Below, one piece after another: positions 20,049 through 41,214 of a DNA stretch of 64,000 bases; the first letter of the stretch is position 1; every line of letters begins with the position of its first letter. Under the pieces are notes generated by a model that worked only from the letters and a program-made list of their open reading frames with translations, searched no databases and was not told the DNA's origin. The position numbers and the translations under genes were made by a program. The DNA lies in the sequence record OZ195776.1; one strand, written 5' to 3'.

Positions 20049-20073
20049 AAAAAAAGCGCCAAAAGGCGCTTTC
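20049..20073 (-). terminator. Rho-independent terminator
   Basis: Minus strand agcgcc-tttt-ggcgcttttttt. Confidence 0.75.
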
Positions 20074-20088
20074 TTAATTTAATCATTT

Positions 20089-20775
20089 TTACTGCTGGAG
20101 CTCACGTTCCAATTCGTAAGATTTACACTTCGCAACTTCGAGCATTACGTCACTGTAATCTTCGTCAGTTAGGAACTGCTTATTGTCTGTCAGACCAATC
20201 AACTTCACTTTAGCTCGGTTACAAGTCTTAGAAGCAGCGATTAGACGATCGTACAACGCCGGTTCAAGAACGTTTTCAACTTCACCGCTCATCGTTTTGT
20301 CTTCATCAATCACAACAACCTGTGTTGGAACAACAGTAACTGACTGAGCTGTTTCAACACCACACAAACGTTCCATTGTATTGCCGTATGTGTTCTTGAA
20401 CTGATTCGTGATAAACTTAGGACGTTGTTCTTCCAAACGATCTGGATATTGAATCGTGTATGCTAGCTCATCTTTCTTGATTTCATCGTAGTAATCACAG
20501 AACGGATACTTGCTCATGTCTGGTTTCGTTGACGTGAAGCCGTTACCAGCTTTTGCCGAACGAACATTTGAGATGCGATCTTCGTTCATCTTCTGAATCG
20601 TGATTTCGTACGACATTGCACGGTCACTGTTGATAAAGAAGTCACCGTCGTATGCTTTGAACATTGCCTTTTCGATAGGCGACACGTGATACTTTGCAAC
20701 TTCGTAGTCTGAACGACCACAAGCTGTTAGTAGAAGACCAAGACCGATAATTGCAATAGATTTTACGAGTTTCAT
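20089..20775 (-). CDS. Putative lipoprotein
   Basis: Signal peptide II with lipobox LTAC. Confidence 0.75.
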   Translation of the reverse strand: MKLVKSIAIIGLGLLLTACGRSDYEVAKYHVSPIEKAMFKAYDGDFFINSDRAMSYEITIQKMNEDRISNVRSAKAGNGFTSTKPDMSKYPFCDYYDEIKKDELAYTIQYPDRLEEQRPKFITNQFKNTYGNTMERLCGVETAQSVTVVPTQVVVIDEDKTMSGEVENVLEPALYDRLIAASKTCNRAKVKLIGLTDNKQFLTDEDYSDVMLEVAKCKSYELERELQQ

Positions 20776-21683: not shown

Positions 21684-21706
21684 AAAAGGCGGGATTTCCC
21701 GCCTTT
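21682..21706 (-). terminator. Rho-independent terminator
   Basis: Minus strand aaaggcggg-aaat-cccgcctttttt. Confidence 0.75.
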
Positions 21707-21713
21707 CAAAGGT

Positions 21714-23156
21714 TTAACCGCGGAAGAATTCCAGATCGTAGCGCTCGTTGCCAACCGCTTGCATCATGATCTTCACAGGTTCAAGCTCACCACCCAACAA
21801 GTTGGTTAGGATGCTTGGCGAACAGCCGCTTACTAGAGCAGTGCCCACTTCACCAGACTTAACTGGTACGTTGCCGATACGACCACGTAGGTTCCAGAAA
21901 ACCAGTTGTGGCATTTCGTAACCAGCTCGAGCGTACTCTTGCTTGATTACTTCCAAGTTGGTCTTCTGACCACCGCCCCAGTAACCTGCACCAGCTTGGT
22001 CGAATTCCATGTCTGACAGAATCAGCATCTTGGTTGGTAGGTCTTCTTGCGATAGACCCGCTTGAACTGCACGTTGCAATAGGACTCGGAAGACCTTGTT
22101 CACGTCAGTCGACATGTTTTCGCCTGAGCGATCCATGTTCATTAGGCGTTCGTGCAACGTTGCACCTTTCAGTGCGTGGAAGTGTGGGTCGCTTGAGAAC
22201 GAAATGAATTGGTTCTGGAAGATACCTTCATTGCGCTCTGCGATGTAAATGCCCAAAGACATTGCAACATCTTTACAAGTTACCGAACCAGTACCTGCGT
22301 TGATTGGAGTCTGCATAGAGCCAGACACGTCAACGATTGGCATGATGCGTTCGTCGCTACCTTCCATGTAGTTAGGTAGAGCCTTCCACTGTGCATCCGC
22401 TACGCGAGCATCACCTCGGTTGACTGACTTAACAATGTCGTATGGGTAAACCGCACCAGCGTTGATCTTCTCAGTGCCTTTTTCAAGACCTTGAATGTAC
22501 TGAGTGTACGTTTCCTGAGCGTTGCGACCAAACGCTTTTTGGTATCGAGCAGAAGCTACCGATGGTAGTTTGCCGAATTCAATTGCGTCCCACTCACGAG
22601 CACACATCTTCTGTTCAACGGTATCAGACAACATTGACAGAATCTTACGAAGCTGTTTGTTCTTGATATCAGCAGCTTTTGCAAGCGCTTTGAAGACATG
22701 ACCGTTTGCAGACTTCTCACGAGGAGTCCACTTCGCAGCAAGGCCGTTGCGCTCGTTTACCAACGCGTTCAGCCAAAGAGCTTCTGCATCAGCTTGAACT
22801 TGCGTACCAAAGGCAACCACAAGATCATCCCAACGACCAAGAGCTGGAACTTTGAACATTACTGCTCGCGCCAAATCTGGTTTCTCGTTACACAGTTTTG
22901 CGAATACCGTACGGAATACGTTACGCTCACCTGCACCACCACGAACGTCACGAGCCCACATCAAGATGCGAGTTGCAACTTCTTGGTTTTCACCGAACGC
23001 TCGGCTAAACAGAGTTACTGCTTCATCAGGAGTACGGCGAAGCGCACCAGCTGTGAAGAACCAGTCCAGACAAGCTGTACCGGATGTTGAATGTGTTACC
23101 GCACCGTTTTCAGTACGTGCGTCGTTTGTTTGCATTGCGTTCATAAAGTTGCTCAT
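21714..23156 (-). CDS. DUF2828-type Ro60/TROVE-like vWA protein
   Basis: T.NGA...STSG.ACLDWF, WARDVRGGAGER, GRWDDL, AAKWTPRE, IVDVSGSM MIDAS, ILSDMEFD, FWNLR. Confidence 0.85.
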   Translation of the reverse strand: MSNFMNAMQTNDARTENGAVTHSTSGTACLDWFFTAGALRRTPDEAVTLFSRAFGENQEVATRILMWARDVRGGAGERNVFRTVFAKLCNEKPDLARAVMFKVPALGRWDDLVVAFGTQVQADAEALWLNALVNERNGLAAKWTPREKSANGHVFKALAKAADIKNKQLRKILSMLSDTVEQKMCAREWDAIEFGKLPSVASARYQKAFGRNAQETYTQYIQGLEKGTEKINAGAVYPYDIVKSVNRGDARVADAQWKALPNYMEGSDERIMPIVDVSGSMQTPINAGTGSVTCKDVAMSLGIYIAERNEGIFQNQFISFSSDPHFHALKGATLHERLMNMDRSGENMSTDVNKVFRVLLQRAVQAGLSQEDLPTKMLILSDMEFDQAGAGYWGGGQKTNLEVIKQEYARAGYEMPQLVFWNLRGRIGNVPVKSGEVGTALVSGCSPSILTNLLGGELEPVKIMMQAVGNERYDLEFFRG

Positions 23157-23196
23157 TTTCAGAAATCCTATTTTCAAATGTGTGCTGTATAATTTC

Positions 23197-23502
23197 TTAA
23201 CAGCGTGGCATTACCACGCCATTTTTATGGATAGTAATTTTCAGACCGTTTCCAGTCTTATTGATGCGAACGTTCTTGTAGCCGTTTTGACGAAGAAGCT
23301 CGCTAATAATCTGACTACCCATATTCTGAGTGTCTTCGAGATGGTGTTGTATGTCCATTTCTAAGGGGAACTCTACACCATCTTTTAAAGAAGTAAACCC
23401 TTTATCCATTTCTTTTGAATAAAAATCAGTTAGAGTTTGGCGAACGTCGTGGTTTCGCTGTGTAATCTGCTTGTTCAGATCATCGTAATGAGGAATTGTC
23501 AT
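23197..23502 (-). CDS. Hypothetical protein
   Basis: Start re-assigned to MTIPHYDD (23502). Confidence 0.6.
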   Translation of the reverse strand: MTIPHYDDLNKQITQRNHDVRQTLTDFYSKEMDKGFTSLKDGVEFPLEMDIQHHLEDTQNMGSQIISELLRQNGYKNVRINKTGNGLKITIHKNGVVMPRC

Positions 23503-23821
23503 TGTTTGCCTTAATAATAATTCGGAACATTCGATTCGAATCGCTGAATCGGCTGTCTGGTTCGTATCCAGGGACTTTAACTTCTGCGTTTCTAAAGCCA
23601 TGTAATGCCAGAAGTTCGCGCACTTGGTCAGCATGAGCTTCTGTCGTTTTGTTAACACATCCAATTTTGATGTGGAAATCAAATGGGAATTTCCCATTTA
23701 ACATACCAGAAAAGAACTTTTCAATTTCTTCACTAGCTTGTTTCTTCACCGTTTCCAGCTCACGAGCGTAACTCGCATCTGAAAGTGATTTAACTGCGTC
23801 GTACGTGATCATTACCACCAC
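23480..23821 (-). CDS. Hypothetical protein
   Basis: ORF within a coupled operon. Confidence 0.6.
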   Translation of the reverse strand: MVVMITYDAVKSLSDASYARELETVKKQASEEIEKFFSGMLNGKFPFDFHIKIGCVNKTTEAHADQVRELLALHGFRNAEVKVPGYEPDSRFSDSNRMFRIIIKANNDNSSLR

Positions 23822-24318
23822 CCTTTATTAGCTTGATCAATCCAGAATTGACGCACGTTTGGTTGTGCATCTTCCCAACAAGAAGTTGTTGGAATCGCTT
23901 CGCGGTACTCATTGTAGAGCTTTTGAGCACGATCTAACATGCGACGAGCGTGCACGTCTGCAGGTTTCGCGAACACGTTTGCACGAACATCAACGGTAAC
24001 AAAGTTGGTAGAGTCACCTGTGCAGTGCATCGCGCGAGCTTTGATAATTTCAACCCAAACATTGTCGTTGTGAACTGCACGAACGATACCAAGTTTCTTG
24101 GTATCGTCACAATCGTTATACATCGGACGAGCAAGACCATCAATCGGAGGAATACCGAAACCATCCCAGCCGTCATCTTTAGCAGAATCAGGTACTAACT
24201 CCCACTCATTAGGAGAAAAGTAGTTGCGTTTGGCTTCCTTACCCCACTGCGATGTAATGTTCTTCGCTCGGATTAGACGAATCTGAGTTGAAGGTTTGTA
24301 ATGATTTGCGTTTAGCAT
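23812..24318 (-). CDS. Hypothetical protein
   Basis: 168 aa ORF. Confidence 0.65.
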   Translation of the reverse strand: MLNANHYKPSTQIRLIRAKNITSQWGKEAKRNYFSPNEWELVPDSAKDDGWDGFGIPPIDGLARPMYNDCDDTKKLGIVRAVHNDNVWVEIIKARAMHCTGDSTNFVTVDVRANVFAKPADVHARRMLDRAQKLYNEYREAIPTTSCWEDAQPNVRQFWIDQANKGWW

Positions 24319-26776: not shown

Positions 26777-27570
26777 AAGTCCATTCGCTTTTCAATATCT
26801 TCACGAACCAATTCGAACCCACGAGATGCTCCAAACGGAATCTTGCGGTCGATGATTGGCATGGCCATTGTCATTTCAGAGTAACCGTTCGACGGCATGT
26901 ACTCAGAATCTTCTGGATCGTACTCAGGGATCGCAGGATCAATCATGATTTTGTACGGGTATGGGTTTGTTGAGAAGAACCAACCAACGTAGTCGACGAC
27001 GCTTAGCTGCGTACCAACAACCACTACAGTGTCTTGAGGTCGAACTGCACCAGCACCACGTAGCAAAGAATTCATTTTCTCGTAGGCAGGCGCCATCTCA
27101 CCAAAGAAGATTACATCTGGCTTGGCGTTTAATTCAAACGTACGTGAATCGATACGGTCTTTCTCGTAATCGTACGCTGCGTAACCGATGTCTTTCGAAT
27201 CGCAATCAGGCGTCGTGTAGTCAGTAACGACTTTGGTCAGCTCACCATGAATATGCAGTACGTCTTCAACGCCAGCGCGTTCAAGCAAGTCTGATACATT
27301 TGCAGTAATGTTGATAACACGATCTTTACCGTATTTCTTTTGCATTTCAGCAATGAAATGGTGCGCTGCGTTTGGCTCAACATTTCCAAGTTGCATACGA
27401 CGTTCGTTATAGAACGAATGCACTTTTTCGTAGTTCTGAGCCCACGTACGGATGTTACAGACTTCGTTCAAATCAAACTTATCCCAGGTACCACCAGTAT
27501 CACGAAAGGTATTGATGCCAGACTCTTTGTCCAGACCAGCACCACTTAAAATAAAAAGTCTTGGTAACAT
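26773..27570 (-). CDS. Sir2/CobB-family NAD-dependent deacylase
   Basis: ILSGAGLDKESGINTFRD, PNAAH, TANVSDLLERAG, HIHGEL, KPDVIFFGE, VVVGT. Confidence 0.9.
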   Translation of the reverse strand: MLPRLFILSGAGLDKESGINTFRDTGGTWDKFDLNEVCNIRTWAQNYEKVHSFYNERRMQLGNVEPNAAHHFIAEMQKKYGKDRVINITANVSDLLERAGVEDVLHIHGELTKVVTDYTTPDCDSKDIGYAAYDYEKDRIDSRTFELNAKPDVIFFGEMAPAYEKMNSLLRGAGAVRPQDTVVVVGTQLSVVDYVGWFFSTNPYPYKIMIDPAIPEYDPEDSEYMPSNGYSEMTMAMPIIDRKIPFGASRGFELVREDIEKRMDL

Positions 27571-27579
27571 CAGTTACTC

Positions 27580-28263
27580 CTATGTGTATTGTTGCATTAA
27601 CTCATCACGAAACGCTTGTTTACGTTTCTCTTCACGCTTTTGTTGTTTGGCAGCTTGCGCTTGTCGTTGTCTACATACCACAAACCACAACGCATTCGCA
27701 ATCACTCGATTCTCAGTCTCGGTAAAACAAGAAGGAATGGTCATTTCAAAACGACCAATGTGATTATTGTAAACAGCCACGAATTTAACTTGCGTGTCTT
27801 TATCTACAATAACACATGAACTGCCGTGTCTAAAGCCCTCAGTTTGGGTCGCAATGTGAAAACGTGTTGGTGTATTGATCATTTTATCGATTATAGCAAT
27901 AGCAGGTTCTTCAACATCGTATTTGAAATCATCAGCAGTCATCATACGGTATTTTGCATAATCTGCACGCATTTCGATCATTTTCTTGGCATTAATTGCC
28001 CAAGGGTTCTCGTAACAATTACCAATGCGACGATGGTTACGGTAGCCAGGACTAAAGCCAGAATTGTCAGGTTGCGTAACGACGTACATCTTGTAAATCG
28101 AAGCAGGACTGTTCAAGAAGGTTTGGAAGTATTTGTGTTTGGGATTTTGGCTTATAAAGCCGCCAATGGTTCCATCACCGTAAGCGTGGACATTGATTTG
28201 AGGTTTGCAAAGAGGGGTGTGAAGAATACTATGGATGTATTCTTGTGCTGTGGTAGTTGACAT
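27580..28263 (-). CDS. Hypothetical protein
   Basis: 227 aa ORF with RBS aggag. Confidence 0.7.
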   Translation of the reverse strand: MSTTTAQEYIHSILHTPLCKPQINVHAYGDGTIGGFISQNPKHKYFQTFLNSPASIYKMYVVTQPDNSGFSPGYRNHRRIGNCYENPWAINAKKMIEMRADYAKYRMMTADDFKYDVEEPAIAIIDKMINTPTRFHIATQTEGFRHGSSCVIVDKDTQVKFVAVYNNHIGRFEMTIPSCFTETENRVIANALWFVVCRQRQAQAAKQQKREEKRKQAFRDELMQQYT

Positions 28264-28289
28264 AACGTTCTCCTTTGATTGATACGGAG

Positions 28290-28318
28290 ATATTAAGCCA
28301 ACTACGTTTTCAGGTCAA
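28290..28318 (-). promoter_or_regulatory. Sigma70-like early promoter
   Basis: Minus strand TTGACC-17 nt-TAATAT. Confidence 0.6.
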
Positions 28319-28321
28319 CGA

Positions 28322-28525
28322 TTAATCCATTCGGGTTAATTCGTGATCGCGAACTTTCTGACCATTACGAGTGTTTTCGTATAATCGATCTGCGCGGATG
28401 TAAGACCAGTCGTAAGGCGAACCATCACGGTGAGCAGCAAGTCGGTAACATACCGATGCAATGTTGCGTCCACGATGATCCTTATCCAACTGGAATAGAT
28501 TTTTGACAACCTTTAGTAAATTCAT
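28322..28525 (-). CDS. Hypothetical protein
   Basis: 67 aa ORF, RBS ggag. Confidence 0.55.
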   Translation of the reverse strand: MNLLKVVKNLFQLDKDHRGRNIASVCYRLAAHRDGSPYDWSYIRADRLYENTRNGQKVRDHELTRMD

Positions 28526-28556
28526 GCTAGTTCTCCAATTAATAAACTCCGGATAA

Positions 28557-28580
28557 AGAAAAACCCGCTCGAGGCGGGTT
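28557..28580 (-). terminator. Rho-independent terminator
   Basis: Minus strand aacccgcc-tcga-gcgggtttttcttt. Confidence 0.65.
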
Positions 28581-28698
28581 ATTTATTGAAGCGATGGCGT
28601 GACAAGCACCATTGAATTTGTGTATAGATTCGCTTGCGGCAATCCTACTGCATACCAGTCTTACCTGGTCCTATATGAGTCACACTTCAAAAATCTTA

Positions 28699-29046
28699 TT
28701 AATCGTAGTACCACCAGAAACCGATGTACTTTTTAGCTTTATCGTAGAAGTCCCAGTTATTTTCAGGATCTTTCCAGAATCGAGCTTGTTGCTGTTGCCA
28801 ATGTGAACGTCTCGCTTTACGAGTGTACCACTTGACTGCAGCGGATTCTTTGTAGTTGTGGTCTGTTTCTTCAACCAAGCACCAAGAGTCATACTCATCT
28901 TCTGTGTTAATCCAATTAGCGTAACGCTCTGGATCCTCATCGTAACGATTGCGAAGCCCGTAATCCATACGGTTGATGTATTCGTCTAATGCTCCGTGAC
29001 GACGCCACGGACGGTTACCTTTTTGCTTACGATATGTTTTTGACAC
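28699..29046 (-). CDS. Hypothetical protein
   Basis: MSKTYRKQKG...; RBS gagg. Confidence 0.65.
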   Translation of the reverse strand: MSKTYRKQKGNRPWRRHGALDEYINRMDYGLRNRYDEDPERYANWINTEDEYDSWCLVEETDHNYKESAAVKWYTRKARRSHWQQQQARFWKDPENNWDFYDKAKKYIGFWWYYD

Positions 29047-29105
29047 TTTTGATTTCCTCTATTGATGACATTCAATAGAAAAAATCGTTCTCAAAATAAT
29101 TCATT

Positions 29106-29369
29106 TTAGCTACCTGTAAACAAGAATGATATCAAACTACCCAAGTCTCCAAAAGACGTGGCACCAAAAGAAAATCCTGATATCCACATTGAAACTGTGA
29201 ATAAAAGTGAAACAAAATGAACACCGAGTGCTCCAAGTTCCATCATTCTTACCGTGTTGCTACTGTTGTATGCTAACGTCAATGCGTTGATTATCAAGAT
29301 TCCGTACCAAGGTACATGAACGCCTATCATCCAACCAATGACAACAAAAAAGATGCTTACGACCACCAT
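29106..29369 (-). CDS. Small membrane protein
   Basis: Three hydrophobic segments. Confidence 0.6.
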   Translation of the reverse strand: MVVVSIFFVVIGWMIGVHVPWYGILIINALTLAYNSSNTVRMMELGALGVHFVSLLFTVSMWISGFSFGATSFGDLGSLISFLFTGS

Positions 29370-29661
29370 TATATAAATTCCTCACAATGAATTTGTGGAT
29401 GCCACTACCATCCTGCACATATTGAATCTTACATTCTGACGTGTGCACGTGCCGCGTGGTTCTCTTTCGATAATTTATACACCACTGAGACTCATAAGAG
29501 GTGTTTGACTGCATACCCAATTCCATCAGTCGCTACTGGCACCAAAACTTCCTTCAAACCAGCTCCCCTGCAGGTTGATCAACTCTATCTCACGACAGTA
29601 TTTGACCTATACTTCTTTAACGTCAGTGCAGACCCGACGATTACACAGTTAAGTGATAATG

Positions 29662-29737
29662 TGGTGGAAGTGGTGGGACTCGAACCCACGACCGACGGCT
29701 TATCGGGCCGGCGCTCTACCAACTGAGCTACACTTCC
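29662..29737 (-). tRNA. tRNA-Ile(GAT)
   Basis: Cloverleaf folded by hand; loop CCGATAA (C33); CCA encoded. Confidence 0.88.
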
Positions 29738-29744
29738 ATTAATA

Positions 29745-29820
29745 TGGTGCACCCTACTGGAATCGAACCAGTGACGCGAAGATCTTCAATCTACCGCTCT
29801 ACCATCTGAGCTAAGGGTGC
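29745..29820 (-). tRNA. tRNA-Phe(GAA)
   Basis: Cloverleaf; loop TTGAAGA; CCA. Confidence 0.92.
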
Positions 29821-30029
29821 ATATTGTATTCGTTTATATCAAAATCGGTTAACGACTCAACGAGAATAGTTGCTTTGTAACCTACGTACAATTCATCTCC
29901 GTACCACAAGTCGGTGCATTCCTCTACAATATAAGAAGAACCAAGAACGATGTGCTTGATGTTAAAGAATTGCAAATTGCGTTCAAGAACTGTTTTAGCT
30001 CTATCTGTCAATGGTTTGATTTTGATCAT
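29811..30029 (-). CDS. Hypothetical protein between tRNAs
   Basis: 72 aa ORF, RBS aggag. Confidence 0.55.
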   Translation of the reverse strand: MIKIKPLTDRAKTVLERNLQFFNIKHIVLGSSYIVEECTDLWYGDELYVGYKATILVESLTDFDINEYNMHP

Positions 30030-30060
30030 AACATTCTCCTATTTGGAGAATATTTATAAT

Positions 30061-30136
30061 TGGAGCGAATGATGAGGTTCGAACTCACGACCTGTTGCTT
30101 GGCAAGCAACCGCTCTACCAACTGAGCTACATTCGC
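30061..30136 (-). tRNA. tRNA-Gly(GCC)
   Basis: Cloverleaf; loop TTGCCAA; CCA. Confidence 0.93.
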
Positions 30137-30597
30137 ATTTGAACTTTTCGGTTCCCGTGTATATTTTGTATGTGGCACGGACCACAACCCCTACGCCTTG
30201 GTGCGTCAATGGAGCTAGTATTCGTTATCAAGTGCTGCTTCCATGTGCTACTCCTTATAGGTTTTCCAAACCCTGATTTCGCACTCTCGGCAGTTTCTAC
30301 GTCAACTTTTCTTCCGATATCCTTTTGAAACACTCACTATCCAGTTGGATTCGCATTGCTAAGTGAGGTCCGCATCCTTAATCGATTTGTCGTACACCTG
30401 AAAATTTTAATTGCTTTGATCGAACAAATTCTTTATTGCTTTCAAATTAGTCAAATCAACTTGAAGTTGCCGTAGCATTACTTCGTTCTTTGTTGATTTA
30501 ATCTGCCTCTCCAAATCCTTTATCAGAAATCCAATAGATGACTTGGTGATATTGAAATAGTTTATATTGAAACTCGCATCTGTTAAACCTTTTTGTT

Positions 30598-30674
30598 TGG
30601 TGGATAGTGCTGGATTTGAACCAGCGACCAACGGATTATGATTCCGACGAACTACCAGACTGTTCTAACTATCC
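30598..30674 (-). tRNA. tRNA-Met(CAT), probably elongator
   Basis: Cloverleaf; loop ATCATAA; CCA. Confidence 0.85.
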
Positions 30675-30676
30675 AA

Positions 30677-30752
30677 TGGTGGAGAATATCGGAATCGAAC
30701 CGATGACCTCCTCCTTGCAAGGGAGGCGCTCTACCAACTGAGCTAAGACCCC
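30677..30752 (-). tRNA. tRNA-Ala(TGC)
   Basis: G3-U70 wobble; loop TTGCAA; CCA. Confidence 0.92.
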
Positions 30753-30846
30753 ATTTATTAAATTCAAGATTGTCTATTGCAGGTGTCCGGACTTACTACT
30801 GCATAAAGCTGCTGCCTTCGTTACCTGGTTCAACAATCTTGGAAAC

Positions 30847-30924
30847 TGGCAGGAGATGTGGGACTCGAACCCAACAACCTTCGGATTTGGAATCCGCTGC
30901 TCTACCAATTAGAGCTAATCTCCT
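30847..30924 (-). tRNA. tRNA-Trp(CCA)
   Basis: Cloverleaf; loop TTCCAAA; CCA. Confidence 0.92.
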
Positions 30925-30978
30925 ATTGATGATTTTATGTTTTTAACGTGGAGATAATCAACAACTCTCACAATCAAT

Positions 30979-31054
30979 TGGGGTGACCTGCGGGGTTCGA
31001 ACCCGCGACCGCCGGAATCACAATCCAGAGCTCTACCAACTGAGCTAAGGCCAC
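30979..31054 (-). tRNA. tRNA-His(GTG)
   Basis: Loop TTGTGAT; C73 discriminator. Confidence 0.92.
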
Positions 31055-31299
31055 ATCTAAAAACACTCAACGAATGCGCTTAGATGTGATTGCCTCACAT
31101 CGAATAGTTTCTCGGACTATTCCAAGACTCTGTTACAAGTCACCGCCCTATTCTATCTGTTGTTATACTCGTGAAGGGTACCGAGTGGTCTTTTGCAAAA
31201 CTATCAAGAGTTTAGCTTCGTGCAAGGCTCTTGGACCTTCTACCGATTAGCGATCGGTATTTCCAGCAATAGAACTAATCGCTCTACTCGTAAAGTTTT

Positions 31300-31410
31300 G
31301 AAGAATGATGGGAATTGAACCCACTTCGGATAACAGCATTGTAAAGAGGCTATCGATTATTTCCTACCGGCTTGTTTCAGACCTGCATTTCCTCTTTGCG
31401 AGCATTCTTT
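31300..31410 (-). ncRNA. tRNA-like RNA with non-tRNA central domain (T4 RNA C/D-like placement)
   Basis: Acceptor AAGAATG/CATTCTT and T arm GTGGG-TTCAATT-CCCAT, but no canonical D or anticodon arm. Confidence 0.5.
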
Positions 31411-31415
31411 CAAAT

Positions 31416-31506
31416 TGGCGGAGAGACAGAGACTCGAACTCTGACGACGCTATTAACATCGAACGGCTTTCAAGGCCGCGGCAGTACCAATTATGCTTAC
31501 CTCTCC
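31416..31506 (-). tRNA. tRNA-Ser(TGA)
   Basis: Long variable arm; loop CTTGAAA; CCA. Confidence 0.92.
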
Positions 31507-31512
31507 AGAATA

Positions 31513-31597
31513 TGGTGCGCAGGGTGGGACTCGAACCCACACGCCCTAAGGCCACGGAATCTAAATCCGCGTTGTCTACCAATTCCAGCACCTGCGC
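31513..31597 (-). tRNA. tRNA-Leu(TAG)
   Basis: Variable arm; loop TTTAGAT; CCA. Confidence 0.93.
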
Positions 31598-31599
31598 AT

Positions 31600-32015
31600 G
31601 TTATTTCTACACCAGACAATAGGACTTACTTCGACTTATTCCAACGTCTAACGTATTAGCTTCACAAGGTCGTCACCTATCATATTCGGATTCACCGTGG
31701 TTGCCACCTATTCGATATAACGTCATCGAAAACGACCTGGTATTCACAAGGGCATAATGCCTATTTCCAAGTAAACCAACTTCGTCGTAATCATGCTAAA
31801 GAGCAAGAATCGAGGTAGTTACCTAATCAACACTCCGTAGAGCTGTTTCCAAGTATTGAAAACGCATCAAAGAGGCGTGGCCTATCATTCTTAGTTAGGT
31901 TTTATTGTTTGCTGGACACTGTCTTCTGTGCAGAACTTTTAATGTGGTTGTTTTTACGATTTCAAGAGAGCCACACTTCCTTGAGTAACCGTCCTAATCA
32001 AGTTAGGAAGGATAA
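31600..32015 (-). ncRNA. About 415-nt structured non-coding RNA (GOLLD/ROOL-like setting, family unassigned)
   Basis: No ORF; multiple nested stems (cttcct/aggaag, cctaa/ttagg, tgtgg/ccaca); between two tRNAs. Confidence 0.5.
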
Positions 32016-32017
32016 TA

Positions 32018-32094
32018 TGGCGGATCCTCAGGGATTTGAACCCCGAACCTTGCGCTTAACAGGCGCCCGCTCTAACCATTGGAGCTAAGGATCC
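32018..32094 (-). tRNA. tRNA-Asn(GTT)
   Basis: Loop CTGTTAA; CCA. Confidence 0.93.
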
Positions 32095-32100
32095 GTAATA

Positions 32101-32177
32101 TGGCGCACCGAGTAGGACTCGAACCTACCTCAATCCTCGTTCGTAGCGAGGTGCCAATCCAGATTGACTACCGGTGC
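32101..32177 (-). tRNA. tRNA-Arg(ACG)
   Basis: Loop CTACGAA; CCA. Confidence 0.9.
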
Positions 32178-32184
32178 AAAAATT

Positions 32185-32261
32185 TGGCGGGTGTGACGGG
32201 ATTTGAACCCGCTACCTACGACGTGACAGGCCGTTATGCAAACCAACTACACCTCACACCC
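32185..32261 (-). tRNA. tRNA-Asp(GTC)
   Basis: Loop CTGTCAC; CCA. Confidence 0.92.
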
Positions 32262-32262
32262 T

Positions 32263-32478
32263 TTAAGAAACTACATGTACAATACCTAGGATTGGAAGAA
32301 CTATAAACCAACAAAGCAAAATTAAGAAGAACAATCCTGTACCAATGATACCAGGTAATTGCTTTAGACGATATCCCCAAAGTCCATACTTCTTGATCTG
32401 TTTCTGACGTTCTAACTCTGCTCGACGAGCGATATTCTCGGAGCTAAAGTAGTTCAGTATATCTCTTGTATCAAACAT
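32263..32478 (-). CDS. Small membrane protein
   Basis: C-terminal hydrophobic helix; lies between tRNAs. Confidence 0.55.
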   Translation of the reverse strand: MFDTRDILNYFSSENIARRAELERQKQIKKYGLWGYRLKQLPGIIGTGLFFLILLCWFIVLPILGIVHVVS

Positions 32479-32493
32479 ATAATTCTCATAAAC

Positions 32494-32571
32494 TGGTCGG
32501 AACTGTAGGATTCGAACCTACGACCCCTTGCTCCCAAAGCAAGCGCTGCTACCAAACTGAGCTAAGTTCCG
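32494..32571 (-). tRNA. tRNA-Pro(TGG)
   Basis: Loop TTTGGGA; C1-G72; CCA. Confidence 0.93.
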
Positions 32572-32646
32572 AAAATAACTGGATACGTTTGTCTTTTTTT
32601 TCAAATAAAAAATTAGATTTAATGTTTGCTGAATGTATCCATAAAC

Positions 32647-32722
32647 TGGCTGGCGTAGGAGGACTCGAACCTCCGACCATCGGTATCAAAAACCGATGCG
32701 CTACCAACTGCGCTATACGCCA
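32647..32722 (-). tRNA. tRNA-Gln(TTG)
   Basis: Loop TTTTGAT; U1-A72; CCA. Confidence 0.92.
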
Positions 32723-32729
32723 ATAAAAC

Positions 32730-32806
32730 TGGTGGGTGTAGAAGGACTCGAACCTTCGACCACTCGATTAAAAGTCGAGTGCTCTAACCAACTGAGCTAC
32801 ACACCC
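32730..32806 (-). tRNA. tRNA-Lys(TTT)
   Basis: Loop CTTTTAA; CCA. Confidence 0.94.
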
Positions 32807-32878
32807 AAATCTTGTAACTGAGATAAGCATCTCATGTTTCCATTTGAAAGTAAACCAGTTATTTGATTTACTTTGAAA

Positions 32879-32955
32879 TGGAAGCGGGAGGTGGATTTGA
32901 ACCACCGACCTTTGGGTTATGAGCCCAATAAGCTACCAGACTGCTCCATCCCGCT
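32879..32955 (-). tRNA. tRNA-fMet(CAT), initiator-like
   Basis: Three consecutive G-C pairs (GGG/CCC) in the anticodon stem; loop CTCATAA. Confidence 0.88.
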
Positions 32956-32961
32956 ACAATT

Positions 32962-33045
32962 TGGTGGGAACACATACCTCCGTGGGCTTATCAACAATAC
33001 TTCACTGACTCGTAAAGTTGATTACCTTCTCCGAAGAGAACTCCC
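32962..33045 (-). pseudogene. Degenerate tRNA-like element, possibly tRNA-Val(TAC)
   Basis: GGGA.../...TCCC-A-CCA ends and a TT-TAC-GA loop, but no TTCGA T-loop. Confidence 0.4.
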
Positions 33046-33051
33046 ATAATT

Positions 33052-33128
33052 TGGTTCTCGAGACGGGAATCGAACCCGCTAATCCCACCTTGAAAGGGTG
33101 GTGACTCAACCAGATGGTCTGCCCGAGA
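33052..33128 (-). tRNA. tRNA-Glu(TTC)
   Basis: Loop CTTTCAA; CCA. Confidence 0.9.
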
Positions 33129-33134
33129 ATTGTT

Positions 33135-33220
33135 TGGTGGGCCATCCTGGACTCGAACCAGGAACTCCGTGAGGAGGACGGATTTACAATCCGCTGCAAT
33201 CGCCATTCTGCCAACGACCC
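33135..33220 (-). tRNA. tRNA-Tyr(GTA)
   Basis: Variable arm; loop TTGTAAA; CCA. Confidence 0.92.
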
Positions 33221-33245
33221 AATGTATTTTTAACTAATGTTATCC

Positions 33246-33320
33246 TGGTGCTCTGTGACGGATTCGAACCGCCGTCACCTCATTACAAGTGAGGTGCTAA
33301 ACCAACTCAGCTAACAGAGC
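33246..33320 (-). tRNA. tRNA-Thr(TGT)
   Basis: Loop CTTGTAA; CCA. Confidence 0.92.
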
Positions 33321-33372
33321 AACGTATTTGTAGTTATTATCCAGCATTCCAGCTGGTTGTAAACTTGAAAGC

Positions 33373-33402
33373 AAAAAAAAAGCCGCTTTAATAAGCGGCT
33401 TC
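33373..33402 (-). terminator. Rho-independent terminator inside the tRNA cluster
   Basis: Minus strand agccgctt-atta-aagcggct followed by a T9 run. Confidence 0.8.
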
Positions 33403-33431
33403 TATAAATCTTTGGAATATAGAAGACGCAG

Positions 33432-33488
33432 TTAGCTCGCAGGATTTGTTTCGTAAATGTAAAATTTTTGAAGTGAATGTGCGAACAT
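33432..33488 (-). CDS. 18-aa mini ORF (possible leader peptide)
   Basis: MFAHSLQKFYIYETNPAS with RBS aaggaa, just upstream of the terminator. Confidence 0.35.
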   Translation of the reverse strand: MFAHSLQKFYIYETNPAS

Positions 33489-33610
33489 AATTGATTCCTT
33501 TGGGAAAAATAAACTTTTTTTCTTTCTCTTACTTTATATATAACAGCTTACTCAAGGATTCGGCTGTTTTAAACAAAAAATTTGAATTTTTTTCAAATTA
33601 ATTTAGAATG

Positions 33611-33970: not shown

Positions 33971-34057
33971 ATTTTTCAAGTTCACACTTTTGATTAGTAC
34001 GGTAGTGACTCTCCGTAATGTGGTGACCCGCCGTGGACTCGAACCACGCCCTATCGA

Positions 34058-34534
34058 TTATTCTGAACGCTCTGTGCGTCTGCGTCTATACGTTGATGTT
34101 TGTGAATGACAATTTGGACACAACCAGGATAGGTTTTCCTTCCGATTATCGTTGCTAATTCCATTAACATGTTCCAGCTCCAATGTAAGAGGTTTCCCAT
34201 TCCAAGTATCCGGAATTCCACACTCATCACAGTGGTTTCGATAGAACCCTAATCGAATTGATATTTGTCGGGCGCTGCTACGAGGTGCAGTGCAATTCTC
34301 TACAAAGAACGATTCTTCGGTGTGTGAAAATTTATTACGCTTAAACGTCTTTTTAACATCAAAGTGTTCAGTAGACACGTCGTACTTATCACACAGCACT
34401 TTCAATCGATTTATATTGTATGTACAGACCGTTATACCAACACCACGGCACACATCACTCCAACAAAACGAATCACTTGCTACGGTGATTAGCTGTTCTA
34501 ACGTATAGTGCTTAAAATCTTTATTGCTTTTCAT
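34058..34534 (-). CDS. HNH homing endonuclease
   Basis: CDEC...LELEHVNGISNDNRKENLSWLCPNCH; stop codon overlaps the tRNA 3' exon. Confidence 0.92.
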   Translation of the reverse strand: MKSNKDFKHYTLEQLITVASDSFCWSDVCRGVGITVCTYNINRLKVLCDKYDVSTEHFDVKKTFKRNKFSHTEESFFVENCTAPRSSARQISIRLGFYRNHCDECGIPDTWNGKPLTLELEHVNGISNDNRKENLSWLCPNCHSQTSTYRRRRTERSE

Positions 34535-34540
34535 TTTCTA

Positions 34541-34578
34541 CTCCTACTGCTGATGTGTTATTTATACAGCAGTAGGAG
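34541..34578 (-). promoter_or_regulatory. Late promoter TATAAATA inside an RBS-sequestering hairpin
   Basis: 12-bp inverted repeat ctcctactgctg/cagcagtaggag; loop holds TATAAATA (34566-34559); 3' arm holds AGGAG 6 nt before the ATG. Confidence 0.85.
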
Positions 34579-34627
34579 ATAATGAGTCGATTGCTCTCAA
34601 CCAGGTGAGCTATCGGGCCACATAAAC

Positions 34628-34704
34628 TGGAGCAAGTGACGGGACTCGAACCCGCGACCACCGACTTGGAAGGACGGAACTCTACCAACTGAGTTTACAC
34701 TTGC
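34628..34704 (-). tRNA. tRNA-Gly(TCC)
   Basis: Loop CTTCCAA; CCA. Confidence 0.9.
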
Positions 34705-34710
34705 AAAACT

Positions 34711-34815
34711 GGATGTACAAAATAGCTCACCATTACCTCAACCCAGAGTAACGTTAGTCTTTTACGACTTGGCTCCTGATATGTAATTTTAGGTTATTGT
34801 TTGCGGTAGACATCC
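34711..34815 (-). ncRNA. Permuted copy of the tRNA mini-intron element flanking about 70 nt of non-tRNA sequence
   Basis: Minus strand GGATG-TCTACCGCAA-AC-AAT ... TATTTTGTA-CATCC. Confidence 0.6.
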
Positions 34816-34843
34816 AAGGTCGAACCTTGACGAATCAAGATCT

Positions 34844-36190: not shown

Positions 36191-36206
36191 TTTAATTTCC
36201 TCTTGA

Positions 36207-36475
36207 TGCCCCACCGTGGATTCGAACCACGCAGTCCATTCATTTTCCTAATACGCAAGGGGCTTGTTAGATTTAGAACCTTAACGTCAATAGAAACTAC
36301 AATTCATCGCTTTCCTGGTGTTAATAACTAACACTGCTTTCACACCAGTAATTACTCAACTCTGTATCTCAATGAAACAAGTTCGTCGGTGAAATTGTCG
36401 TTAATTAGACGACGCATTCTCGGAACAAGTTAGTCTGAGCATGACCATGTCAACGGTCTCCAGTTAGAATGGGGC
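36207..36475 (-). ncRNA. tRNA-like RNA with a large internal domain (5' end uncertain)
   Basis: 3' CGTGG-TTCGAAT-CCACG-GTGGGGC-A pairs with GCCCCAT 270 nt upstream; a closer alternative is GCCCCTT at about 36265. Confidence 0.4.
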
Positions 36476-36497
36476 TTTGTTTAATACATAATGTAAT

Positions 36498-36616
36498 CGG
36501 CCGGTGTAGGACTCGAACCTACGACCACGAGCTTAACGGGCTATTGAGTTTAGTGTGCGGTATCGATTCTTGACAGAATCATTTCATACGTGCTCTACCA
36601 ACTGAGCTAACCGGCC
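36498..36616 (-). tRNA. tRNA-Asn(GTT) with a 46-nt insert (36543-36588) at position 28/29
   Basis: Removing the insert gives stem CG|AGC / GCTCG with loop CCGTTAA. Confidence 0.8.
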
Positions 36617-36626
36617 ATAATTTATT

Positions 36627-37034
36627 TTACTCTGATTTAACATCCAAAGTAAACAGTTTTGCATTGCTTTCTTTCATCGGTTGAACGCCGACTATTTCTT
36701 CTGCAAGTAACGATGGGACAACTTGCTTCGGAATTTTGACGGTAACGCCACTTTCCTTTGCTTGCTCGCGAAGTTCTTTTGAACGTTCACGTAACATTGC
36801 AAGATGTTCTTCACGTTTTGTTACTATGTCATCAAGGTGCTCGTCGATAGTACCGATTTCGTACTTCTCACCGTAAGCAAAGGCAGTATGCCAGTGAATC
36901 TTTTTAAATTCAGCAATCTGCTTGATGTCTTTGATGACGCGTACTTCGTCGTAAACCCAACCACAGTTGATACATTCAATTGCGATTTGATCTCCGTTTT
37001 CATCGAAGAATAAAGCGTTACTTGGTAAACTCAT
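36627..37034 (-). CDS. Hypothetical protein
   Basis: 135 aa ORF. Confidence 0.65.
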   Translation of the reverse strand: MSLPSNALFFDENGDQIAIECINCGWVYDEVRVIKDIKQIAEFKKIHWHTAFAYGEKYEIGTIDEHLDDIVTKREEHLAMLRERSKELREQAKESGVTVKIPKQVVPSLLAEEIVGVQPMKESNAKLFTLDVKSE

Positions 37035-37060
37035 AATATAATCTCACGAAATAAAACAAT

Positions 37061-37190
37061 TGGTAGAGGGTGCAGGATTCGAACCTGCGCCACGGAATTT
37101 AAGAGTTTCAATGCAATTTTGGTTGCCGCAACTATTCTTTCCAGAATAATGTTTGTGCTACGTGTGCTTGCCGTTTTACACCAACCCTCT
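37061..37190 (-). tRNA. tRNA-Lys(CTT)-like with a 51-nt insert (37110-37160) at position 28/29
   Basis: Removing the insert gives CG|GAA / TTCCG around A-CTCTTAA-A; CCA encoded. Confidence 0.7.
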
Positions 37191-37289: not shown

Positions 37290-37431
37290 GGATGTACAAA
37301 TCTTCTGGTGCGTTTTCCAATTCGCTACCTCCCCGTCGATACATTATTGGTGGGGAGGGTTGGGATTCGAACCCAACTCATCACAAAAGTGAACCAGTTC
37401 TACTCGATTAATATTACGCTGTAGACATCCT
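37290..37431 (-). tRNA. Circularly permuted class II tRNA (Leu-like) flanked by the split mini-intron
   Basis: Minus-strand order: intron 3' half, 3' exon (variable arm, T arm, CCA at 37348-37350), 13-nt linker, 5' exon GGGGAGGTAGCGAATTGGAAAACGCACC, intron 5' half. Confidence 0.7.
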
Positions 37432-37436: not shown

Positions 37437-37515
37437 TGGCCAGTAGTAAGGGACTCGAACCCAAGCACGGACTCCACGAGGGCGACTGCTTTACCTAACA
37501 TAAGCTAAACTACTT
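37437..37515 (-). pseudogene. Degenerate tRNA (anticodon stem unpaired; possibly Arg TCG)
   Basis: Acceptor, D and T arms and CCA present; anticodon arm does not pair. Confidence 0.55.
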
Positions 37516-37522: not shown

Positions 37523-37641
37523 TGGCGCGTGTGACAGGACTCGAACCTGTGACCTCCGGCGGGATTAATGTAATTGCTGTAACGATTCATTACTGAATCC
37601 ATTTATTAGGCCGGCATTCTAACCAACTGAATTACACACGC
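37523..37641 (-). tRNA. tRNA-Asp-like with a 42-45 nt insert in the anticodon loop (about 37564-37608)
   Basis: Asp-type D arm (ATTC/GAAT), stem CCGGC/GCCGG; same insert consensus; possible mature loop CT-ATC-CC. Confidence 0.7.
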
Positions 37642-37659
37642 GATGTTAAAAACAATTTG

Positions 37660-37780
37660 AGCAGCGTACAGGATTCGAACCTGTGTTACCTCCTGGAAAT
37701 GGAATTAGCGTTAGTTGCTGAAAGCATCTTTACCAAGATACATTGCTTTTAGGTGTCCTAGGCCACTAGACGAACGCTGC
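37660..37780 (-). tRNA. tRNA-Glu(TTC) with a 48-nt insert (37704-37751) at position 28/29
   Basis: Removing the insert gives CC|TCC / GGAGG with loop ATTTCCA; Glu-type D arm. Confidence 0.8.
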
Positions 37781-37807
37781 TCAAATTGTTTTTATTAAGT
37801 CTTATTG

Positions 37808-37931
37808 CCGGCGGGGCTGGATTCGAACCAGCGACCTCGTGCTCCCTATGCAATTAATAATTGGTTGCGGTACCCAATCTTTTCAGATTGGTTTATTAAT
37901 ACGCGCGCTAACCTGACTGCGCTACCCGCCG
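37808..37931 (-). tRNA. tRNA-Pro(AGG) with a 49-nt insert (37853-37901) at position 28/29
   Basis: Removing the insert gives CG|TGC / GCACG with loop ATAGGGA; Pro-type body. Confidence 0.8.
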
Positions 37932-40758: not shown

Positions 40759-41214
40759 TTAGGCGCTCTTCTCAACCCAGTCTAAATCCAGTGGTTCGCT
40801 ATACTCGTCAATTAAATTGATGGGTTGCGAAATGTCCAGTGGTTTGACTGCATCGTCATATGACAATGTTATGTGTGCGTTGTACTCAGGAAAATCGTGA
40901 GTACCGCCTGCATCGATTAAATCATCGTGTCGATTTTTCAACCCTTCCGATTTCAATTTAACGATGACTACTGACTTGCCTTCTTGATCTTTCCAACTAT
41001 CAACTCGATAGGCTTCCGCGTCATACGAGTTACCGGTAGATGGAACTTCAATCCCATTACGACTGTATAACACAGTCGCGTGAAACTTACTTGATTCAAG
41101 AGGATTGTTCAGTTTGAGCGTTTTCTGCAGCTCTTGTAACCATTCAGAGCTCGCAGAGTCTACTTTGACACCAACATAAGTGCCTTGGTTTTCAAGAAAC
41201 TGCTGAAACTTCAT
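40759..41214 (-). CDS. 57B: Anti-CBASS nuclease Acb1 (gp57B, 2H phosphoesterase)
   Basis: FHATVLYSR and HDFPEYNAHITLSY (two HxT motifs), EYSEPLDLDW C-terminus as in T4 57B. Confidence 0.9.
   Translation of the reverse strand: MKFQQFLENQGTYVGVKVDSASSEWLQELQKTLKLNNPLESSKFHATVLYSRNGIEVPSTGNSYDAEAYRVDSWKDQEGKSVVIVKLKSEGLKNRHDDLIDAGGTHDFPEYNAHITLSYDDAVKPLDISQPINLIDEYSEPLDLDWVEKSA

What the first reader, a model, noticed from the sequence alone, without database searches (positions are those of the whole stretch)
34711..34815. Second permuted intron element enclosing a non-tRNA exon: candidate small circular RNA gene
Minus strand: GGATG-TCTACCGCAA-AC-AAT (intron 3' half), about 70 nt with a small hairpin (agtc-gtaaaa-gact), then TATTTTGTA-CATCC (intron 5' half, starting TA). 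The ends re-form the element's central stem. If the element splices, this permuted intron-exon layout yields an about 70-nt circle.
Basis: partly seen in the sequence, partly recalled or inferred. Interest (0 to 1): 0.72.

Follow-up and report, generated by a model that had tools for sequence, protein, structure and literature searches.

The report
Split phage RNA element, no tRNA inside
The two sequence halves are real and belong to an apparently undescribed family of small RNA elements that interrupt or flank tRNA genes in large phages, but nothing shows that the about 70 bases they enclose here are a gene for a functional circular RNA.

Summary
The window is Vibrio phage D479. On the minus strand, 34815-34711 reads as described: helix arm plus TACCGCA motif, 71 nt, then the complementary arm. 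Both ends nearly match (12/13 and 11/11) the ends of element A (37430-37290), which encloses a circularly permuted tRNA. The same helix-plus-motif unit, as a hairpin, interrupts the anticodon stem of five tRNA genes here. Cutting it out in silico restores recognisable tRNAs in 8 of 9 cases tested across D479, KVP40 and CBB. I found a third split copy (C, 32640-32581) with only about 30 A/T-rich nt inside. Similar "empty" copies occur in KVP40, nt-1, CBB and GAP32. The closing helix covaries. Rfam and the literature searches found nothing matching.

So the layout is real and homologous to a permuted-tRNA cassette. The insert, however, is not a tRNA in any permutation. It has no homologue, no excess folding stability and no conserved relative. 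Empty family members show the layout needs no cargo gene.

Most likely this is a processing cassette with decayed or incidental content in the tRNA-Gly leader. A circle of 61-71 nt is possible but untested, and probably a by-product.

The parts
34810..34817 (-). B, closing helix P1, first strand (TTGGATGT). It corresponds to the 3' arm of the hairpin-form element.
   Evidence: Pairs with 34709-34716 as 8 bp including one G-U (sequence). Family P1 covaries. Its outer 3 nt overlap an alternative upstream hairpin at 34829-34815.
34801..34809 (-). B, conserved single-stranded motif (C-TACCGCA-A; family consensus YNCNGCAA)
   Evidence: The same 7-mer TACCGCA occurs in the tRNA introns at 37872 and 36562. 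It is in register with RRAT-NNN in all copies.
34786..34800 (-). B, tail after the motif. ACAA (34800-34797) can pair with TTGT (34720-34717) to form a weak P2. Candidate 3' junctions lie after 34796 (..CAAT|) or after 34786 (..AAAAT|TACAT).
   Evidence: GCAAACAATA is shared with KVP40, nt-1, CBB and GAP32 elements. AAT|TGCAT-type junctions occur in introns D479-1, CBB t15 and GAP32 1668.
34725..34795 (-). B, enclosed 71-nt insert (61 nt with the alternative junction). It contains the hairpin at 34769-34756.
   Evidence: No tRNA in any permutation. No Rfam match. Circular-fold z -0.11 and 0.05. No homologue. 12/13 match of AAAAGACTAACGT to element C.
34717..34724 (-). B, lead (TATTTTGT). It corresponds to the 5' end of the hairpin-form element, and the candidate 5' junction lies before 34724.
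   Evidence: The D479 and several CBB introns start with TA 6-12 nt before the arm.
34709..34716 (-). B, closing helix P1, second strand (ACATCCAG), followed by the trailer GTTTT and tRNA-Gly
   Evidence: TTTGTACATCC is identical in A. The trailer xGTTTxTTT is shared by A, C, KVP40, nt-1 and Mimasvirus copies.
34628..34704 (-). tRNA-Gly(TCC), starting 6 nt after B. B lies in its 5' leader.
   Evidence: ARAGORN and Rfam.
37290..37430 (-). Element A: the same termini enclose a permuted class-II tRNA. Order is 3' half 37404-37348 with encoded CCA, a 13-nt linker, then 5' half 37334-37305.
   Evidence: The best canonical arm after joining is ACCAG-AGTAGAA-CTGGT, which is Leu(UAG)-like. The anticodon assignment is uncertain.
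32581..32640 (-). Element C: a split copy with only about 30 A/T-rich nt inside. It sits between tRNA-Gln and tRNA-Pro.
   Evidence: It is the top hit in the window (30.3 bits, E 4e-5) of a covariance model trained only on CBB and GAP32 elements.
36543..36588 (-). Hairpin-form element (intron) in tRNA-Asn-like gene 36497-36616
37116..37160 (-). Hairpin-form element in the tRNA-like gene at about 37050-37180. Boundaries are uncertain.
   Evidence: Excision did not give an ARAGORN tRNA.
37564..37605 (-). Hairpin-form element in tRNA 37526-37641
   Evidence: The Rfam tRNA model matches with a 45-nt insert.
37704..37751 (-). Hairpin-form element in the tRNA-Glu(UUC)-like gene at about 37659-37781
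37853..37901 (-). Hairpin-form element in tRNA 37808-37931
   Evidence: The Rfam tRNA model matches with a 60-nt insert.

Best explanation
B is a split-configuration copy of a conserved phage RNA element. The element has three parts:
- a 6-8 bp helix (P1);
- an asymmetric loop carrying YNCNGCAA on one strand;
- a weak second helix (P2).

In hairpin configuration the same element sits inside the anticodon stem of at least five tRNA genes of this phage and has to be removed to give a tRNA. In split configuration it flanks a permuted tRNA (A).

Proposed mechanism for B. In the minus-strand polycistronic transcript, B's two halves pair across the insert and rebuild the element. The machinery that removes the hairpin form then cuts at the two inner junctions. 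I take that machinery to be a protein endonuclease plus an RNA ligase; neither is identified. The cuts separate the upstream mRNA from the tRNA-Gly precursor and release the 61-71-nt insert, possibly with its ends joined into a circle.

The insert itself is most likely decayed or incidental cargo, not a gene selected for its sequence.

Shown: the sequences, the homology of the termini, P1 covariation, in-silico restoration of tRNAs, and the absence of a tRNA in B.
Inferred: transcription, cleavage, ligation and circularity.
For: - Termini are homologous to A: 12/13 and 11/11 identical, in the same order.
- A encloses a permuted tRNA with an encoded CCA, which can only work after joining at the anticodon arm.
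- Excision of hairpin-form copies restores tRNAs in 8 of 9 genes from D479, KVP40 and CBB. The junction usually falls after nt 28, inside the anticodon stem.
- P1 is 100% paired, with compensatory changes at 4 of 6 pairs and 0/500 shuffles reaching this. The same trend holds across 38 distinct elements and in RNAalifold.
- Empty split copies are conserved across D479, KVP40, nt-1, CBB and GAP32, often right next to tRNAs.
- B has the same strand, trailer and position as these copies, 6 nt before tRNA-Gly.
- The insert lacks every sign of a selected RNA.
Against: - There is no RNA-level evidence of any kind.
- The covariance model trained on Mimasvirus empty copies does not score B (2.2 bits).
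- The generic signature alone is at chance level.
- B's P2 is only 4 bp.
- Splice-site geometry is not constant among the introns, so B's junctions cannot be fixed.
- An upstream hairpin (34829-34815) competes for 3 nt of P1.
- No close relative of D479 holds an orthologue of B to test for selection.
- No endonuclease or ligase candidate was identified.
Confidence: 0.4

Rival explanations
1. Unspliced structured RNA. The helix-plus-motif is a protein-binding stem, and split copies are stand-alone small RNAs or spacer modules. These would act as a scaffold, decoy, stability element or processing element, in the manner of Y RNAs. B would be a 105-nt member with a non-tRNA inner module.
For: The architecture parallels YrlA-type Y RNAs: paired 5' and 3' ends with a conserved motif on the 5' strand, an inner module that is a tRNA in permuted order, a size of 80-130 nt, and occurrence in phages (PMC4201824). 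The Rfam YrlA model matches the inner module of a CBB element (31.4 bits). Two CBB and GAP32 copies have their own TGnTATAAT promoter about 15 nt upstream. Empty copies also lie between protein genes. A-U and U-A pairs in mid-P1 are invariant in 38 elements, which suggests sequence-specific recognition.
Against: The YrlA motif GNCGAAN0-1G is absent. The YrlA match is far below its gathering score, and tandem tRNAs give the same kind of hit. No Ro60/TROVE gene was looked for or found. This reading does not explain why excision of the hairpin form gives perfect anticodon arms, nor why A encodes CCA.
Confidence: 0.25
2. Functional small circular (or linear) RNA gene. The insert is excised, circularised and acts on its own, for example as a sponge, decoy or guide.
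For: The permuted layout has intact termini. The termini are far better conserved between A and B than the interiors. The insert ends can pair (ACC/GGT plus ATTAC/GTAAT), which would bring the junctions together. Mid-sized split copies with non-tRNA or partial tRNA-like content exist in CBB and GAP32, for example L033:18514.
Against: There is no homologue, no excess stability, no Rfam match and no covariation data. Empty copies show the shell is kept without cargo. The only complementarities found are at chance level.
Confidence: 0.12
3. Inert relic. B is a dead remnant of a permuted tRNA cassette (or of a duplication of A's ends) that is neither folded nor processed.
For: The interior is unalignable to A and to tRNAs. 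P2 is weak. B is unique to D479. There are faint tRNA-like traces, such as GGAGC after TACATA (as in the 3' exon of tRNA 37808-37931) and a D-arm-like GTTGAGGTAATGGTGAGC.
Against: Both termini stay nearly identical to A, and mutually complementary over 8 bp, while the interior has diverged completely. This is unexpected under neutral decay unless there was recent gene conversion. Shell-only copies are conserved between distant phages.
Confidence: 0.18
4. Self-splicing RNA. The roughly 45-nt element is itself a ribozyme, so B is a natural permuted intron-exon that makes a circle without proteins.
For: There are strictly conserved unpaired nucleotides (C-N-G-C-A) next to a conserved helix. No splicing endonuclease is known in bacteria (general knowledge).
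Against: The element is far smaller than any known self-splicing intron. It matches no ribozyme family in Rfam. Splice-site distances from the motif vary, with leads of 6-12 nt and tails of 9-13 nt.
Confidence: 0.05

Closest known systems
Circularly permuted tRNA genes with bulge-helix-bulge termini (Cyanidioschyzon merolae, some archaea) and archaeal BHB introns (from general knowledge; reviewed in PMC4090602 and PMC6379350, which appeared in my search lists but were not read)
   Same: The 3' half precedes the 5' half. Sequences outside the halves pair to rebuild the motif that elsewhere marks ordinary tRNA introns. Maturation is expected through a circular intermediate. The same motif also occurs outside tRNAs.
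   Different: The motif here is a helix plus an asymmetric YNCNGCAA loop, not two 3-nt bulges around 4 bp. Both junctions lie on the same side of P2. The host is a bacteriophage of Vibrio. Introns sit mostly after nt 28, inside the stem. B contains no tRNA.
Permuted intron-exon (PIE) arrangements of group I introns, such as the Anabaena tRNA-Leu and T4 td introns used to make circular RNA (PMC12355055 and PMC12336344, seen as abstracts in a search list)
   Different: There is no group I core. No Rfam group I match was found. The two halves total only 34 nt. Self-splicing is not shown and is unlikely.
YrlA-type bacterial and phage Y RNAs (Rfam RF02553; PMC4201824)
   Same: Ends pair in a stem with a conserved motif on the 5' strand. 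The inner module is a tRNA in permuted order with a capped acceptor stem. The size is 80-130 nt. M. smegmatis YrlA is cut by RNase P and receives CCA.
   Different: The motif differs (GNCGAAN0-1G). No Ro60 gene is known nearby. B lacks the tRNA-like module. The same element also occurs as a hairpin inside real tRNA genes.
HDV-like theta ribozymes next to phage tRNAs (PMC10879173, abstract only)
   Same: Small RNA processing elements attached to tRNA genes of phages.
   Different: Different fold. No Rfam match was found here. Self-cleavage is not shown.
T4 species 1 and 2 stable RNAs (rnaC, rnaD) in the T4 tRNA cluster
   Same: Small non-tRNA RNAs co-transcribed with the tRNAs of a T4-type phage. 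Their function has long been unknown.
   Different: I saw no P1-motif signature in their sequences. Model R1 gave no hit at E<=0.01 in that locus.

Membership tests
Helix-plus-YNCNGCAA element family defined in this report (hairpin form in tRNAs, split form elsewhere) | P1 helix of at least 6 bp whose first strand starts RRAT | tested here: met
   GGATGT/ACATCC, 8 bp with flanks. Pair types fit the covariation table of 38 elements.
Helix-plus-YNCNGCAA element family defined in this report | Motif NNCNGCR 2-4 nt after RRAT-NN, on the strand that follows P1 | tested here: met
   GGAT-GTC-TACCGCA, the same register as five introns, A and C. GCAAACAATA matches KVP40, nt-1, CBB and GAP32.
Helix-plus-YNCNGCAA element family defined in this report | Detected by a covariance model trained on other phages' split copies | tested here: not met
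   R1 gives 2.2 bits on B, against 30.3 bits for C. R1 models short empty copies and handles a 71-nt insert poorly, so this is weak negative evidence.
Helix-plus-YNCNGCAA element family defined in this report | Same strand as, and next to, tRNA genes, with an xGTTTxTTT trailer | tested here: met
   6 nt before tRNA-Gly, with trailer AGTTTT. Compare.
Helix-plus-YNCNGCAA element family defined in this report | Removed or cut at the RNA level | not testable with these tools
   Only in-silico excision of hairpin copies is available.
Permuted tRNA gene | tRNA 3' half, linker and 5' half between the termini | tested here: not met
   ARAGORN finds none in about 1000 junction variants, even at a lowered threshold, whereas A is positive. 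No Rfam tRNA match.
BHB (archaeal/eukaryal) intron | Two 3-nt bulges on opposite strands separated by a 4-bp helix, each holding a splice site | tested here: not met
   By inspection of the nine introns, both junctions lie on the exon side of P2. The loop opposite is 8-13 nt and flank lengths vary.
Group I intron (PIE) | Group I catalytic core (P3-P9) | tested here: not met
   No Rfam group I match at E<=1 or E<=10. The halves total 34 nt.
YrlA / Y RNA | tRNA-like inner domain and GNCGAAN0-1G in the stem | tested here: not met
   B has neither (motif from PMC4201824).
YrlA / Y RNA | Ro60/TROVE gene in the genome | not tested
   Only 10 ORFs near the cluster were scanned, with no TROVE match. 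The rest of the 258-kb genome was not scanned.
Known small self-cleaving ribozymes (hammerhead, twister, twister-sister, pistol, hatchet, hairpin, HDV-like) | Match to the family covariance model | tested here: not met
   No such match.

The most novel reading that the evidence does not exclude
The helix-plus-YNCNGCAA unit is a complete splicing signal that works wherever its two halves can pair. It may even be a protein-independent ribozyme of about 45 nt. B would then be a natural permuted intron-exon that releases a 61-71-nt circular RNA with a role of its own in infection.
Probability: 0.07. Interest if true: 0.92.

Novelty: new variant of a known kind. Interest (0 to 1): 0.58.

Why it matters
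If these elements are removed at the RNA level, they would be tRNA introns of a non-group-I kind. A would be a permuted tRNA gene in a bacterial virus. Neither appears in Rfam 15 or in the papers I could search.

That would imply an unrecognised RNA cut-and-join pathway in infected bacteria. The splice junction usually lies inside the anticodon stem, so the joined exons would form a nick in a duplex. From general knowledge, that is the preferred substrate of T4-type RNA ligase 2, whose natural role is still open. This link is my inference only.

B is useful mainly as a test object. It carries the termini without a tRNA, so it can show whether the element alone is enough for cutting and circularisation.

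Tried and rejected
- **Close relatives of B.** I ran blastn (near and distant) on B and on 2-10 kb around it against 50,697 phage records; only D479 itself matched. The neighbouring 109-aa ORF has no relative in 5.8 billion proteins or in IMG/VR.
- **Pattern scans for the termini.** The IMG/VR hits were all chance matches in coding DNA. The JGI metagenome scans gave zero hits, also for A's tRNA half.
- **Mimasvirus-type pattern with a B-sized gap in IMG/VR.** Three chance hits only.
- **Half-element HMMs (nhmmer).** Too short to be informative.
- **Covariance model R1.** It finds C, KVP40 and nt-1 copies but not B.
- **Composite-pattern statistics.** Not significant.
- **Insert as decayed tRNA.** Local alignment to all tRNAs gives p 0.58, so I keep this only as a faint possibility.
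- **Insert as antisense or sponge.** Only chance-level 9-12-mers were found, including a 10-mer complementary to the next tRNA half.
- **Coding potential.** No ORF of 40 aa or more overlaps B. By my reading of the sequence, the only ATG-initiated frame is a 12-codon ORF with a misplaced Shine-Dalgarno sequence.
- **Promoter and terminator scans.** Counts are at chance. One 10/12 promoter-like site lies at 34933-34904.
- **Enzyme candidates.** Pfam on 10 neighbouring ORFs gave an HNH protein, an Acb1 homologue and a Gp23 fragment, and nothing RNA-splicing related. tblastn of cluster ORFs against the tRNA regions of KVP40, nt-1, CBB and GAP32 gave no shared candidate.
- **T4 rnaC and rnaD.** No shared motif.
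- **Integron attC, terminator and DNA-site readings.** Considered from the sequence and dropped. The element is strand-specific and sits at a fixed place inside tRNA stems.

Full report
**Source and setting.** The window is Vibrio phage D479 (OZ195776.1; record position = window position + 186000). It is a 258-kb T4-type phage, syntenic with KVP40 and nt-1 around its tRNA cluster. The cluster lies on the minus strand between about 29.6 and 38 kb. ARAGORN finds 26 tRNAs. Rfam adds two tRNAs that carry inserts of 45 and 60 nt.

**The observation.** Read on the minus strand, 34815-34711 is as described: GGATG, TCTACCGCAA, AC, AAT, then 71 nt with the hairpin AGTC-GTAAAA-GACT (34769-34756), then TATTTTGTA-CATCC. 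The ends pair over 6 bp, or 8 bp with the two flanking bases on each side. MFE folds also pair the ends, with one mismatch and without the flanking pairs. The element ends 6 nt before tRNA-Gly(TCC) and starts 29 nt after the stop codon of an ORFan gene.

**What the halves are halves of.** Five tRNA genes in the window carry a 42-49-nt insert (about 36497-36616, 37050-37180, 37526-37641, 37659-37781 and 37808-37931). Each insert is a 6-7-bp hairpin followed, in fixed register, by T-R/W-C-N-G-C-A. Related tRNA genes with the same insert exist in two groups of phages:
- KVP40 (annotated as pseudo-tRNAs) and nt-1;
- the Mimasviruses CBB and GAP32.

I removed the insert in silico from nine such genes. 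ARAGORN then recognised a tRNA in eight: Asn(GUU) twice, Lys(UUU), Glu(UUC) twice, a Pro(AGG)-like, a Val(AAC)-like and one with an oversized loop. In most, the junction falls after nucleotide 28, inside the anticodon stem. The 3-bp remainder of the stem covaries between orthologues. I therefore accept that the hairpin form is an intron in the operational sense. No RNA data support this directly.

**The split form.** Element A (37430-37290) has the arm and motif first. Then come a tRNA 3' half ending in an encoded CCA, a 13-nt linker and the matching 5' half. The complementary arm comes last. Doubling the sequence lets ARAGORN find the tRNA. The best canonical arm after joining is Leu(UAG)-like.

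B shares 12 of 13 and 11 of 11 bases with A's two termini, while the interiors do not align. By my calculation such a pair of matches is expected about 2e-6 times in the window.

A motif scan turned up a third split copy, C (32640-32581), between tRNA-Gln and tRNA-Pro. Its arms are GGATAC/GTATCC, a compensatory variant, and only about 30 A/T-rich nt lie inside.

**The family elsewhere.** In CBB and GAP32 the split form is abundant, with at least ten copies per 24-40 kb. Lengths run from 41 to more than 250 nt.
- Long copies enclose tRNAs or tRNA-like modules in permuted order. One has its acceptor stem capped by UUCG. Two are preceded by a TGnTATAAT promoter.
- Short copies (41-63 nt) are essentially empty. 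Some of them lie between protein genes.

I built a covariance model from eleven empty CBB and GAP32 copies. Its top hit in the D479 window is C (30.3 bits, E 4e-5). It also finds empty copies just upstream of tRNA-Asn in KVP40 and nt-1. Those two copies share GCAAACAATA with B, in register with the motif.

The closing helix covaries. It is 100% paired, four of six pairs show changes on both sides, and 0 of 500 shuffles reach this. The alignment was fitted to the model, which favours the structure. RNAalifold on a MAFFT alignment and my table of 38 distinct elements agree. The base pair just outside P1 also switches between G-C, A-U and U-A (my reading).

**Limits of the membership claim.**
- The model does not score B.
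- The generic signature is at chance level in this window.
- B's membership therefore rests on four things: its homology to A at both ends, the shared tail with KVP40, nt-1 and Mimasvirus copies, the shared trailer, and its place in the cluster.

**The insert.**
- It is not a tRNA in any circular permutation or junction choice.
- It matches no Rfam family even at E<=10.
- It folds no better than shuffles, linear or circular.
- It has no significant similarity to the window's tRNAs.
- It has no homologue in phage genomes, IMG/VR or JGI metagenomes.
- It shares a 12/13 stretch with C. It also shows faint resemblance to the 3' exon of tRNA 37808-37931 and to a D arm. Both fit descent from a tRNA-bearing cassette but prove nothing.

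The 3' junction could lie after 34796 (CAAT|, as in several introns) or after 34786 (AAAAT|TACAT, resembling AAT|TGCAT junctions). The circle would be 71 or 61 nt.

**Mechanism.** The element is not a bulge-helix-bulge motif, not a group I intron, and not any ribozyme in Rfam. The lead (6-12 nt) and tail (9-13 nt) vary together. The junctions therefore seem set by where the element meets the exon helix, not by a fixed distance from the motif.

I favour a protein endonuclease plus a ligase, but I could not identify either. After excision the exon ends would form a nick in a duplex. This suits a nick-sealing ligase of the Rnl2 type, which jumbo and T4-type phages often encode (PMC7824862; general knowledge). 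That link is an inference.

An alternative reading is a protein-binding stem as in YrlA Y RNAs (PMC4201824). These have the same overall architecture. Their Rfam model weakly matches a CBB inner module. The motif differs, however, and this reading does not explain the restored anticodon arms or A's encoded CCA.

**Verdict.** The claim of a gene for a circular RNA is not supported. Empty family members show that the shell persists without cargo, and B's insert bears no mark of selection.

The family as a whole seems undescribed in the sources I could search. Rfam 15 has no match, and six literature searches found no paper on phage mini-introns or permuted phage tRNAs. It deserves experimental follow-up, with B as a convenient tRNA-free test case.

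Noticed in passing
window 34021-34620 (-): A tRNA with anticodon CAT is split. Its 5' part is 34620-34580 and its 3' part 34057-34021. The intervening 522 nt (34579-34058) are almost entirely an HNH endonuclease ORF (34534-34058). That ORF is preceded by a strong hairpin whose loop holds TATAAATA, a T4 late-promoter-like sequence. There is no group I match in Rfam. It could be an intron of unknown type or a disrupted gene.
   Followed up: partly
window 37290-37430 (-): A circularly permuted class-II tRNA gene (element A) with an encoded CCA and a 13-nt linker. The joined anticodon loop would read AGUAGAA, with G at position 33.
   Followed up: partly
window 32581-32640 (-): A third split element (C) between tRNA-Gln and tRNA-Pro. 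It has homologues in KVP40 (L032:16487-16540) and nt-1 (L034:20383-20437), both upstream of tRNA-Asn.
   Followed up: yes
L033 (CBB) 17847-24000 and L035 (GAP32) 26875-33533: There are many split elements. Several enclose permuted tRNA or tRNA-like modules, for example L035:31733-31849 (acceptor capped by UUCG) and L033:20591-20726 (joined arm GCUAU-CUAAAAA-AUAGC). Two have their own extended -10 promoter. None is annotated.
   Followed up: partly
window 37808-37931, 37526-37641; L033 18941-19059: Several spliced products would carry unusual anticodon loops: A34 anticodons AGG and AAC, C at position 33 in the Asn-like tRNA, and a 10-nt loop in CBB t15. The loop AUAGGGA is conserved between D479 and GAP32 (L035 about 1690).
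   Followed up: no
window 37437-37514 (-): A tRNA-like sequence with an acceptor stem, D arm and T arm, ending GCCA. Neither ARAGORN nor Rfam calls it, and its anticodon region does not fold canonically.
   Followed up: no
window about 36200-36300 (-): An isolated T-arm-like hairpin (GTGG-TTCGAAT-CCAC) followed by GGTGGGGCA. A possible partner GCCCC lies about 40 nt upstream. It may be another tRNA-like or partial gene.
   Followed up: no
window 40759-41214 (-): The gene annotated 'RNA ligase' in the record is an Acb1 (anti-CBASS 2H phosphoesterase) homologue (Pfam E 4e-40). It corresponds to KVP40 gp57B.
   Followed up: partly
window 36627-37034 (-): A 135-aa ORF inside the tRNA cluster has a C-terminal 37 residues that match the N-terminus of the major capsid protein Gp23. 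The match is just above the Pfam cut-off. The ORF is annotated 'major head protein'.
   Followed up: no
window, after tRNAs (e.g. 34627-34619, 32646-32641, 32493-32485): The tRNAs in the parts of the cluster I read are followed by the same trailer, CCA-GTTTAT(G). The split elements end with a similar xGTTT trailer. This may be a shared processing site.
   Followed up: no
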